A DNA stretch of 64,000 bases from Podarcis muralis (Eukaryota): positions 13,330,001 to 13,394,000 of the forward strand of contig NC_135667.1 in the NCBI RefSeq assembly GCF_964188315.1. The letters run 5' to 3'. Under the pieces are notes generated by a model. It ran no database searches and was not told where the DNA came from. It saw only the letters and a program-made list of their open reading frames with translations. Below, in pieces: positions 14,283-15,217 of the stretch (its first letter is position 1; every line of letters starts with the position of its first letter). The position numbers and the translations under genes were made by a program.

Positions 14283-14331
14283 CTGAAAAGCAAATAGGCA
14301 GAAAACAACGGTCAGGAGACCCAGCAGCTAG

Positions 14332-14676
14332 TCATAAATTCTTTCTCACATAAGCTTTGTATGCATTAGATTTCCACCGCCCTAAGTCCTTTATCCTGTC
14401 TGCTGAGAGCCCAGGATGCACTGCCGTGGTTGCTGCCCCTATCCAAAAGGAGTGAGCCGCAAATTCCGCCGTGGGCAGTCCGCATGCTGTCAACGCCATG
14501 CGCATCACCCACGTAAACTGATGCCTGGCCAAGAGCGATCCATCCGCATGAATAAATAGTGGGCCGGGGCTACTGGGTCTTAAGTAGAGGAAACGCCTCG
14601 TATCCCTAACCGGACAGGGACCACTAGCCTGTGCAGCTGGTAACCGAAGGAGGGCCCCTCTACCCTGTTGGTCCTT
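14332..14676 (-). pseudogene. Ngaro tyrosine recombinase, C-terminal third only
   Basis: DQQGRG...CPV...GPLF...HSFWIGAAT (catalytic R replaced by W)...GRWKSNAYKAYVR. Confidence 0.92.
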
Positions 14677-15217
14677 CAAAGGGAGGTTCGGTGAAGGGGC
14701 TTGCCACCCTGCCTGCCCTGATTTCTTTCTCTATCTTTTTTCTGACTATCTCAGGCCTTTCCTTAACTGACTTTTGATTTTGTGGGTCCCCGGTGTTAGG
14801 GGGGAAAGCCACGGGGATTCTGAACCCCTTGGAGAACCCCTCCCAAAGGTATTGTGCAGCTTTTCGATCAGTATACTGGTCCAGCAAGGTTTTGAGGGGC
14901 TGAAGTTTGATGGGAGAGGAGGCTAAACCCAGGTGCAGATTACTGGCGGTTACCAGGTCCCTGGTGGGTGGATCCGGGGGCACCCCTGTTATTGTTGTGG
15001 AAGAACCCCCGGCCCCCCCAAAAGGGCTGCTGTTTGTTCTTGAAGCAGGCAGAGGCGGGGTGGTTACCCCAGCACCACTCACATTCATGCAGATACTTAC
15101 AGGAGGGTCGCGAGCATACACCCCTGTTGTACTCCCAGCACTGGCGGCGCCGCTTCGCCTCTGTCTTACCCGCCTTGAAGGGTTCCTGATTTTTCTTTTC
15201 AATGTAGGGATTGACAT
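14677..15217 (-). pseudogene. Ngaro pol ORF N-terminus; RT and RNase H deleted
   Basis: ATG at 15217 overlapping gag; YLWEGFSKGFRIP...N..S...P..V..KI..E...GR...PF..PPF is the typical DIRS pre-RT segment, cut at ~14676. Confidence 0.85.

What the first reader, a model, noticed from the sequence alone, without database searches (positions are those of the whole stretch)
14283..15170. Predicted splice joining gag in frame to the SGNH hydrolase (Gag-esterase, mirroring CR1 ORF1p)
Seen (minus strand): branch-point-like CTGAC (~14313-14309), pyrimidine tract cgttgttttctgcctatttgcttttcag and acceptor at 14283/14282, needing phase 1. Two gag donors are phase 1: GCG G|GTAAGA (intron from 15169, just before the Zn finger) and CCT G|GTAACC (intron from 14953, four codons before the gag stop). 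Either gives ...G|AA CAC AAG AGG GTG = E-H-K-R-V-RIWLVGHS. Inference: one intron would remove all of pol and YR and give a Gag-esterase protein, architecturally like CR1 ORF1p; the upstream donor would swap finger for esterase. Each phase match has a 1-in-3 chance by itself. This route is not exclusive with readthrough.
Basis: partly seen in the sequence, partly recalled or inferred. Interest (0 to 1): 0.75.

Follow-up and report, generated by a model that had tools for sequence, protein, structure and literature searches.

The report
Ngaro esterase acceptor real, donors wrong
In this dead copy of a lizard Ngaro jumping gene, the proposed splice acceptor in front of the esterase gene is conserved and probably real, but its likely partner is a conserved donor in the middle of gag rather than either proposed donor, so the family most likely makes a spliced "front of Gag + esterase" protein.

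Summary
The branch-point-like CTGAC lies at 14315-14311, 2 nt off.

**Acceptor (AG 14284-14283, exon from 14282): more than chance.**
- It scores best of 412 AG sites in the element's sense strand.
- The AG and its pyrimidine tract are kept in all 8 diverged copies compared.
- It is the acceptor of at least 20 annotated Gag-esterase gene models in lacertid lizards and one in a newt.

**The two proposed donors (15170|15169, 14954|14953): not supported.**
- 8 of 10 decent donor-like GTs in gag are phase 1 anyway.
- Neither site is conserved across families.

**A better partner: CAG|GTACGT at 15803|15802, phase 1.**
- Its G|GT-NCG-TC pattern is kept at synonymous positions in 8 of 8 loci.
- It is the annotated donor in 5 of 6 mapped fusion models.
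- The product would be about the first 215 Gag codons (helical hairpin, basic patch) fused to an SGNH esterase. This layout resembles zebrafish L2 ORF1p.

**Readthrough is not general.** The recombinase is in frame in only 3 of 8 loci, and one of those has two stops.

**No direct RNA proof.** Three RNA runs show zero depth over gag. This copy is dead: gag frameshift and about 1.9 kb deleted.

An earlier report of this scan reached a similar view on another copy.

The parts
13000..18641 (-). Examined part of a Ngaro-type tyrosine-recombinase retrotransposon copy. The 5' end is near 18641. The 3' repeat block continues below 13000 and is interrupted by a CR1-like LINE.
   Evidence: Repeat A1 (about 18641-18415) matches A2 (about 13617-13395). 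The copy is about 75-79% identical in DNA to full-length Podarcis muralis copies L003 and L008.
16031..16444 (-). Gag, first piece: ATG 16444-16442, in a frame that runs into a stop at 16030-16028. A frameshift at about 16045-16065 separates it from the rest of gag.
   Evidence: Translations and frame map. The N-terminus matches P0071 and P0046.
15803..16016 (-). Gag, second frame, up to the conserved donor. It contains the basic KRKSKKK..KKKR patch and ends at ..GAC TCA G.
15797..15806 (-). Conserved 5' splice site TCAG|GTACGT. Last exon base 15803, intron GT at 15802-15801, phase 1.
   Evidence: G|GT-NCG-TC is present in 8 of 8 loci. It is the annotated donor in L002-L006, and of a different intron in L008. 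It scores at the 99.5th percentile.
14283..15802 (-). Inferred intron in this deleted copy, 1520 nt. Full-length relatives have about 3.4 kb.
   Evidence: Homology to the mapped introns of L001-L006. The deletion is shown.
14943..15802 (-). Remainder of gag inside the inferred intron: conserved core and the CCCH/CCHC zinc-finger region. Stop at 14942-14940.
15165..15173 (-). Decent consensus but not conserved across families.
14949..14957 (-). Weak, and absent even from the closest relative.
14679..14938 (-). Stub of the N-terminal part of pol.
   Evidence: Aligns to L003 up to position 4830. ORF list.
14658..14679 (.). Internal deletion junction. About 1.9 kb is missing (RT/RNase H and the recombinase N-terminal part; L003 4830-6736).
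   Evidence: The same gap is seen against L008.
14332..14658 (-). Tyrosine-recombinase C-terminal stub, ending in TGA at 14334-14332. The stop is in frame with the hydrolase and followed by CTAG.
14283..14315 (-). 3' splice site: branch-point-like CTGAC 14315-14311, pyrimidine tract 14310-14285, CAG with the AG at 14284-14283.
   Evidence: Best of 412 AG sites in the element. The AG is invariant and the tract is kept in 8 of 8 loci.
13714..14282 (-). SGNH/GDSL hydrolase exon (phase 1, 189 codons including the junction codon, stop 13716-13714). There is no ATG before the catalytic GHS serine. All catalytic blocks are present; the C-terminal about 12 residues differ from relatives.

Best explanation
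The pyrimidine tract and CAG at 14283|14282 are the 3' splice site of the Ngaro esterase exon. Its partner is the conserved 5' splice site CAG|GTACGT at 15803|15802 in the middle of gag.

In intact family members, one phase-1 intron of about 3.4 kb removes the gag core, pol and the recombinase from part of the full-length transcripts. The resulting subgenomic mRNA starts translation at the gag ATG. Its product has about the first 215-235 Gag residues (a short helical hairpin, a long disordered stretch and a Lys/Arg-rich patch) fused to an SGNH esterase. Whether the intron is retained or spliced would set the ratio of Gag and Pol to esterase.

The shared Gag front could take the esterase to the same complexes or membranes as Gag. 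That last step is inference.

The copy in this window is a relic. The sites and the esterase frame survive, but gag exon 1 is frameshifted, about 1.9 kb of pol and recombinase is deleted, and no RNA was seen.
For: 1. Acceptor. It is the best of 412 AG sites in the element and sits at the 99.5th percentile of the window. The AG is invariant, with a pyrimidine-rich tract and a branch-point-like motif, in WIN, L001-L006 and L008, although the spacer is otherwise diverged.

2. Gene models. At least 20 public models join the Gag front to the esterase at the same alignment position. Six mapped to DNA are all two exons, GT-AG and phase 1, with introns of 3365-3404 nt. An independent annotation, P. 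lilfordi P0007, gives the same structure.

3. Donor constraint at synonymous sites. The pattern is GGT, then ACG, TCG or GCG, then TC, in 8 of 8 loci. By contrast, 12 of 13 other invariant Gly columns of gag vary at the third position. GGT makes up 34% of Gly codons and NCG codons about 19%.

4. The esterase frame has no ATG before the catalytic serine in WIN, L002, L003, L004 and L005.

5. The recombinase-to-esterase frame offset is 0 in 3 loci (one with two stops), -1 in 3 and +1 in 2. Readthrough or one fixed frameshift therefore cannot be general.

6. In P. raffonei, two annotated isoforms with different non-element first exons use the same acceptor.

7. Product architecture. AlphaFold of the relative P0027 gives helices 35-45 and 50-68, disorder over 70-220, and a confident alpha/beta domain. 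That domain has an SGNH fold by Foldseek. The nearest solved sequence is the ZfL2-1 ORF1p esterase 4c1b, E 2.5e-7.
Against: No junction read. In three bulk RNA runs, each about 12% sampled, depth over gag (14310-16900) is zero, depth over the esterase is 0-4, and there is no joint at the acceptor. The splice is therefore not shown at RNA level for this subfamily.

Gene models are predictions.
- I cannot see their RNA support.
- The models were retrieved because they are fusions.
- The same pipeline also draws other donors into this acceptor: a recombinase 'SKTDQRG|' donor in P0009, P0011 and P0073.
- L001 uses a donor 27 nt downstream of the conserved one.

Other negatives:
- No assembled transcript contig with the fusion appeared among Logan or ENA hits.
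- No intron-less DNA copy appeared in the DNA contigs.
- One other gag Gly codon (15752-15750) is also GGT in all 7 aligned loci, so invariance alone is not unique to the donor.
Confidence: 0.66

Rival explanations
1. First reader's version. The acceptor pairs with a donor late in gag: 15170|15169, just before the zinc finger, or 14954|14953, four codons before the gag stop. The product would be nearly whole Gag, or Gag without its finger, fused to the esterase.
For: Both GTs exist and are phase 1. 15170|15169 has a fair consensus, at the 99.1st percentile, and is kept in the closest relative L003.
Against: The phase match is uninformative, because 8 of 10 decent GTs in gag are phase 1. 14954|14953 is weak and is GGC in L003. 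15170|15169 is absent in L001, L002 and L005. None of the at least 20 annotated fusions contains the gag core or finger.
Confidence: 0.05
2. The esterase is made by reading through the recombinase stop (TGA-CTAG, 14334-14332), or by ribosomal frameshifting, as a recombinase-esterase fusion. The acceptor-like tract would then be incidental.
For: In this copy the recombinase and esterase are in frame across a single TGA followed by CTAG. L005 is also in frame, across a TAA.
Against: The two are in frame in only 3 of 8 loci, which is what chance (1 in 3) predicts. L008 has two TGAs in the spacer. The offsets are -1 in L001-L003 and +1 in L004 and L006. The stop type and its context differ between loci.
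Confidence: 0.07
3. There is no dedicated splice. The fusion models are gene-predictor artefacts on repeats. The esterase would then be expressed in some other way (its own ATG in some families, or chimeric host transcripts) or not at all. The conserved GGT-NCG-TC would reflect protein or RNA constraints unrelated to splicing.
For: There is no RNA evidence here. The predictors also produce other joins (P0009, P0011, P0073, and P0071's 174-nt in-frame intron). L001 and L006 have an ATG in the spacer. Another gag GGT codon is invariant as well.
Against: The ATG is not conserved. It is hard to explain a top-ranked acceptor kept in 8 diverged copies together with a phase-matched donor constrained at synonymous sites. 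Two annotation pipelines converge on the same structure.
Confidence: 0.17
4. A donor at the very start of gag (16408|16407, after codon 12) gives a 13-residue leader fused to the esterase. This would resemble avian retroviral env, which shares the first few gag codons.
For: CTG|GTAATC is phase 1 relative to ATG 16444.
Against: The score is weak (93rd percentile). The GT is lost in L008 and L003, both of which read GGC. No model uses it.
Confidence: 0.02

Closest known systems
Ngaro elements with an SGNH-hydrolase ORF after the recombinase (Goodwin and Poulter 2004, as summarised in PMC9210276)
   Same: Gag-like ORF1 with a zinc finger, a recombinase, split direct repeats, and a hydrolase ORF downstream of the recombinase. 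The function of the hydrolase is unproven.
   Different: The papers I could search describe a fourth, overlapping ORF. They say nothing about how it is expressed; PMC9210276 contains no 'splic', 'intron' or 'readthrough', and the top 'Ngaro' + 'splic' hits were unrelated. Here the ORF appears to be an exon joined to the gag front. This copy is also a deletion derivative.
Esterase-type ORF1p of CR1/L2 non-LTR retrotransposons (zebrafish ZfL2-1; PDB 4c1a and 4c1b; PMC3905857)
   Same: An SGNH esterase domain, which is the nearest solved structure by sequence. It is preceded by N-terminal helices, a poorly conserved linker and an Arg/Lys-rich motif (PMC3905857 describes coiled coil, Arg-rich motif and esterase).
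   Different: ZfL2-1 ORF1p is one continuous ORF of a LINE. Here the same layout would be assembled by splicing inside a recombinase retrotransposon. Coiled-coil dimerisation and lipid binding are untested. The adjacent CR1-like ORF1 esterase in this window shares only a 25-residue match with it.
Spliced subgenomic mRNAs of retroviruses and LTR retrotransposons (env / ORF3)
   Same: An intron removes gag-pol so that a 3' gene can be translated. PMC5408684 states that ORF3s of LTR retrotransposons, including GDSL esterases, are typically expressed from spliced messages. From my own knowledge, avian leukosis virus env borrows the gag AUG and first codons.
   Different: The element is of the DIRS/Ngaro order, for which I found no report of splicing. 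About 215 Gag codons are shared, far more than the few that ALV env borrows.
Earlier report of this scan on another copy of this genome (s1-189840)
   Same: It also reads the spacer as a conserved acceptor, and the esterase as a spliced fusion to the start of Gag rather than as readthrough.
   Different: That report concerns other DNA.

Membership tests
Ngaro (DIRS-order tyrosine-recombinase retrotransposon) | Reverse transcriptase/RNase H and tyrosine recombinase genes | tested here: inconclusive
   In this copy only a pol N-terminal stub and the recombinase C-terminal tail remain, because about 1.9 kb is deleted. The full-length relatives L003 and L008 have long pol and recombinase frames, and the gene next to P0071 carries RVT_1.
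Ngaro (DIRS-order tyrosine-recombinase retrotransposon) | Split direct repeats (A1 ... B1-A2-B2) | tested here: met
   A1 at 18641-18415 matches A2 at 13617-13395, 96% identical over 83 nt. The B repeats were only partly seen (D3 and D4).
Ngaro (DIRS-order tyrosine-recombinase retrotransposon) | Hydrolase ORF downstream of the recombinase (vertebrate Ngaro) | tested here: met
SGNH/GDSL hydrolase | Catalytic blocks: Ser in block I, Gly in block II, Asn in block III, Asp-x-x-His in block V | tested here: met
   The following are invariant or nearly so in 16 relatives and present in the window copy: G11-H12-S13, G46, G74-E75-N76-D77 and D165-G-V-H168.
SGNH/GDSL hydrolase | Pfam family score and fold | tested here: inconclusive
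   The window exon scores 18.6 bits against a cut-off of 32.9. However, 15 of 16 relatives match PF13472 at E below 0.01. The AlphaFold model of relative P0027 matches TesA and GDSL esterases with TM about 0.7. The window protein itself was not folded.
Spliceosomal GT-AG intron | GT and AG ends, pyrimidine tract, branch-point-like motif 18-40 nt upstream, compatible phases | tested here: met
   The branch-point A at 14312 lies 29 nt before the G of the AG. Donor and acceptor are both phase 1.
Spliceosomal GT-AG intron | Sites conserved in diverged relatives | tested here: met
   8 of 8 loci for both sites.
Spliceosomal GT-AG intron | Junction seen in RNA | tested here: inconclusive
   There was no expression of this subfamily in the three RNA runs, so there are no reads to span the junction.
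CR1/L2 esterase-type ORF1p | Esterase related to the LINE ORF1p esterases | tested here: met
   The profile of 16 Ngaro esterases hits 4c1b first, at E 2.5e-7. Identity of 4c1b confirmed in PMC3905857.
CR1/L2 esterase-type ORF1p | First ORF of a non-LTR (APE/RT) retrotransposon | tested here: not met
   The host element is a recombinase retrotransposon and the protein needs a splice. The resemblance is one of working principle, not family membership.
Programmed stop-codon readthrough | Single in-frame stop in a conserved context between the two ORFs | tested here: not met
   The two ORFs are in frame in 3 of 8 loci, one of which has two stops, and the stop and its context vary.

The most novel reading that the evidence does not exclude
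Vertebrate Ngaro elements carry a functional intron whose 5' site lies inside gag. Alternative splicing of the genomic RNA yields a 'helices, basic patch, esterase' protein that converges on the ORF1p of CR1/L2 LINEs. This would be the first splicing-dependent gene expression described for DIRS-order retrotransposons. It would also mean that two unrelated retroelement classes independently need the same kind of membrane- or lipid-directed accessory protein.
Probability: 0.55. Interest if true: 0.65.

Novelty: new variant of a known kind. Interest (0 to 1): 0.5.

Why it matters
The hydrolase of Ngaro elements has been known for twenty years with no proven function and no stated route of expression (PMC9210276, PMC6681497).

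A conserved phase-1 intron gives a concrete, testable answer:
- where to place RT-PCR primers;
- which junction peptide to look for;
- which protein to express, namely the Gag front plus esterase rather than the bare ORF.

It also predicts that intron retention against splicing regulates these elements, as in retroviruses. And it strengthens the case that esterase-bearing, Gag- or ORF1p-like proteins arose more than once in retroelements.

For genome annotation, it explains the many 'uncharacterized protein' two-exon genes in lacertid genomes as Ngaro Gag-esterase transcripts.

Tried and rejected
**RNA reads.** My one reads call used the three bulk RNA runs of the species plus one DNA run, at 90% likeness, on 13000-16900.
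- There was no depth over gag and no joints at either site, so this is uninformative rather than negative.
- I left 16900-18700 out of that call. A donor in the leader was therefore not tested by reads.

**Transcript-derived fusion proteins.** The Logan and ENA contigs hold only the esterase ORF with the unspliced spacer in front.

**Intron-less ('processed') DNA copies.** None appeared among the joints of the DNA contigs, and there is no second Ngaro copy in the window.

**Donor at gag codon 13.** Rejected because it is not conserved.

**Highest-scoring gag GT, 15500|15499 (AAG|GTGAGA, phase 1).**
- Its Gly is absent in the other families, judged by the protein alignment.
- No model uses it, so I did not adopt it.

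**Fixed -1 or +1 frameshift.** Rejected because the offsets are mixed.

**Own ATG.** Not conserved.

**Bacterial promoter/terminator scan.** Irrelevant to an animal genome, and it found nothing.

**Zootoca isoform X1 partner of P0044.** It could not be fetched. The newt locus has no DNA on hand.

**Steps deliberately not taken.**
They were searched separately by reference.
- In one search the script concatenated the exons of public gene models, only to confirm that they translate to their own public proteins. Nothing joined was saved or searched.

Full report
**What is there**

On the minus strand, from about 18641 down to at least 13000, lies one copy of a Ngaro-type tyrosine-recombinase retrotransposon. 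Earlier notes of this scan call the genome a wall lizard, Podarcis muralis. I did not test that.

The copy contains, in order:
- Terminal repeat A1 (18641-18415), repeated as A2 (13617-13395).
- A long leader.
- A gag-like ORF1 starting at ATG 16444. It is broken by a frameshift near 16045-16065, so it reads as two frames: 16444-16031 and 16016-14943.
- A CCCH/CCHC finger region near the gag end.
- A short stub of pol (14938-14679).
- A deletion junction at 14679/14658, which removes about 1.9 kb relative to the full-length relatives L003 and L008.
- The C-terminal tail of the recombinase, ending in TGA at 14334-14332.
- A 49-nt spacer.
- An SGNH hydrolase frame running to the stop at 13716-13714.

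The hydrolase frame has no ATG before its catalytic Gly-His-Ser.

**Check of the observation**

The acceptor tract runs 14310-14285 and ends in CAG, with the exon starting at 14282 in phase 1. CTGAC lies at 14315-14311, 2 nt off the stated place. The two donors have last exon bases 15170 and 14954, both phase 1.

I ranked sites with an approximate splice-site weight matrix against all GT and AG dinucleotides on both strands of the window.
- The acceptor is at the 99.5th percentile and is the best of 412 AG sites in the element's sense strand.
- Donor 15170|15169 is at the 99.1st percentile. Donor 14954|14953 is at only the 93.4th.
- Ten of the 74 GTs in gag score 2.5 or more, and eight of those ten are phase 1.

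A phase-1 match for two donors therefore says nothing.

**Relatives**

The hydrolase exon, searched by reference on its own, finds 21 lizard proteins. Two of them have a Gag-like N-terminus: P0010 from P. muralis and P0007 from P. lilfordi.

Searching with those public proteins finds at least 20 annotated Gag-front plus esterase models. They come from P. muralis (many loci), P. raffonei, P. lilfordi, Lacerta agilis and Zootoca vivipara. One more comes from a newt, Lissotriton helveticus, whose gene range is 4.4 kb.

In the alignment the junction always falls at the same position. It lies just after a Lys/Arg-rich patch and a Ser-rich run, and about four residues before the (V/I)RIWxVGHS start of the esterase.

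I fetched six of these loci and solved their exon structure exactly. Each is two exons with one GT-AG intron of 3365-3404 nt, in phase 1. The intron contains the gag core, pol and the recombinase. A seventh locus, L008, is a full-length copy whose gag N-terminus is much like the window's, though its DNA is only about 75-79% identical.

**The acceptor**

In all eight sequences (the window plus seven loci) the AG is in the same alignment column. It is preceded by a T/C-rich tract and by a CTGAC, CTAAC or CTAAT-type motif. The rest of the spacer is barely alignable.

The closest relatives, L003 and L008, share the window's CCTGAC ... TTTCAG|A arrangement.

The translated spacers of further esterase-only ORF calls end in Ser-Gly, Leu-Gly or Pro-Gly, or in Ala-Gly in P0018. 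That is xxA|Gxx, the same AG in the same phase, in at least ten more sequences.

In P. raffonei, a solitary esterase exon is annotated with two isoforms. These have different, non-element first exons, and both are spliced to this same acceptor. From my knowledge of the NCBI pipeline, alternative isoforms are normally called only with transcript support. I could not verify that here.

**The donor**

Five of the six mapped models use G|GT(A/T/G)CGTC at one homologous gag codon. L001 uses a GT 27 nt further on but has the same GGTACGTC in place. The window has it as GAC TCA G|GT ACG TCA, with last exon base 15803, phase 1, at the 99.5th percentile. L008 has it too, and the annotation there draws a different, 174-nt in-frame intron from that same donor.

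The pattern looks constrained at the nucleotide level. The Gly codon is GGT in 8 of 8. The next codon is ACG, TCG or GCG, so the amino acid changes while the CG stays. By contrast, 12 of 13 other invariant Gly columns in gag vary at the third position. GGT is 34% of Gly codons, and NCG codons are about 19% of Thr, Ser and Ala codons. One other Gly codon (15752-15750) is also GGT in the seven sequences aligned, so I do not treat invariance alone as proof.

Donor 14954|14953 is GGC in L003 and absent in the others. Donor 15170|15169 is kept in L003 only, is a poor site in L004, and is absent in L001, L002 and L005. No annotated fusion contains the gag core or the finger. A candidate donor at gag codon 13 is not conserved either.

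**Rival routes**

| Route | Result |
|---|---|
| Readthrough of the recombinase stop | In frame only in the window (TGA), L005 (TAA) and L008, where two TGAs intervene |
| Fixed ribosomal frameshift | Offset is -1 in L001-L003 and +1 in L004 and L006 |
| Own ATG in the spacer | Present only in L001 and L006, at different places |

Three of eight loci in frame is what chance gives. Splicing is the only route compatible with all eight loci.

**RNA**

The single reads call gave no test. In three bulk RNA-seq runs of the species, each about 12% sampled, depth is zero from 14310 to 16900 and 0-4 over the esterase. There is no joint or pile of loose ends at 14282.

A 34-nt pile at 13714-13747 has unrelated sequence on both sides, so it comes from something else.

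The DNA run covers the whole stretch and shows no copy lacking the intron.

The subfamily is silent in those samples.

**What the product would be**

AlphaFold on an alignment of 19 public fusions (first row P0027) gives:
- two helices, 35-45 and 50-68, with pLDDT about 85-89;
- disorder through residues 70-220, which includes the basic patch;
- a confident alpha/beta domain, 228-414.

That domain matches TesA, GDSL lipases and sialate O-acetylesterases at TM about 0.7.

By sequence profile, the nearest solved chain is 4c1b, the esterase of zebrafish ZfL2-1 ORF1p (E 2.5e-7; identity of the entry confirmed in PMC3905857). That paper describes ORF1p as coiled coil, Arg-rich motif and esterase, and shows esterase activity and binding to acidic phospholipids.

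The Ngaro fusion has the same order of parts. Function is inferred, not shown.

The window's esterase keeps all catalytic blocks. Its last dozen or so residues differ from those of its relatives.

**Literature**

The papers I could search describe the Ngaro hydrolase as an extra ORF of unproven function, and I found no mention of how it is expressed. PMC9210276 has no occurrence of 'splic', 'intron' or 'readthrough', and the one 'splic' hit in PMC6681497 concerns trans-splicing in trypanosomes. A search for 'Ngaro' with 'splic' found 97 papers. I judged the 15 listed by title and abstract only, and none appeared to concern Ngaro splicing.

For LTR retrotransposons, ORF3s including GDSL esterases are said to be expressed from spliced messages (PMC5408684).

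An earlier report of this scan on another copy (s1-189840) reached the same general reading. It is not independent evidence.

**Verdict**

- This particular copy is a dead relic that merely preserves the signals.
- The family-level inference is moderately well supported by comparative evidence but lacks RNA proof. That inference is a spliced Gag-front plus esterase message in a DIRS-order retrotransposon.

**Procedural notes**

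Noticed in passing
window 8725-12727 (+): A CR1-like LINE lies inside or next to the Ngaro 3' repeat block. Its ORF1 carries a GDSL esterase (PF13472, E 1e-9) and its ORF2 has endonuclease and RT. Two esterase-bearing retroelements of different classes therefore lie within 5 kb. The two esterases share only a 25-residue match.
   Followed up: partly
window 13714-13747: There is a sharp pile of RNA reads (depth about 75-95 with both directions summed, against 0-7 around it) in all three RNA runs. 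Unrelated sequence follows on both sides, and there is a fixed C>A at 13735. This is a short motif shared with abundant transcripts or another repeat, not Ngaro expression.
   Followed up: no
window 15752-15750 (minus strand; gag Y-W-G motif): A second gag glycine codon is GGT in all 7 loci aligned (L008 not checked). It would also be a phase-1 G|GT, but with a poor donor consensus. The reason for the synonymous-site invariance is unknown.
   Followed up: no
P0009, P0011 (P. muralis), P0073 (Eublepharis macularius): Some annotated models join the recombinase N-terminal part, ending ..SKTDQRG, to the same esterase acceptor. This is either a second donor inside the recombinase gene or predictor noise. 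The region is deleted in the window copy.
   Followed up: no
L007:3001-7781 (P. raffonei LOC128420587): A solitary Ngaro esterase exon inside a large host gene is annotated with two isoforms. Their first exons (3001-3117 and 4977-5015) are not from the element. This may be exaptation or chimeric transcripts.
   Followed up: partly
L008:6659-6832: The gag model P0071 has a 174-nt in-frame intron. It starts at the conserved donor and ends at an AG without a pyrimidine tract, although the skipped stretch is open.
   Followed up: no
window 25000-64000: Four to five large direct repeat units of about 9.5-13 kb, 90-98% alike, fill the right half of the window. An olfactory-receptor-type 7TM ORF lies at 19707-20651 on the minus strand.
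   Followed up: no
window 16915-16990 (minus strand leader): A simple (AC)n and (AAAT)n run sits inside the Ngaro 5' leader. The leader also holds a 30-nt tandem duplication at 16695-16754.
   Followed up: no
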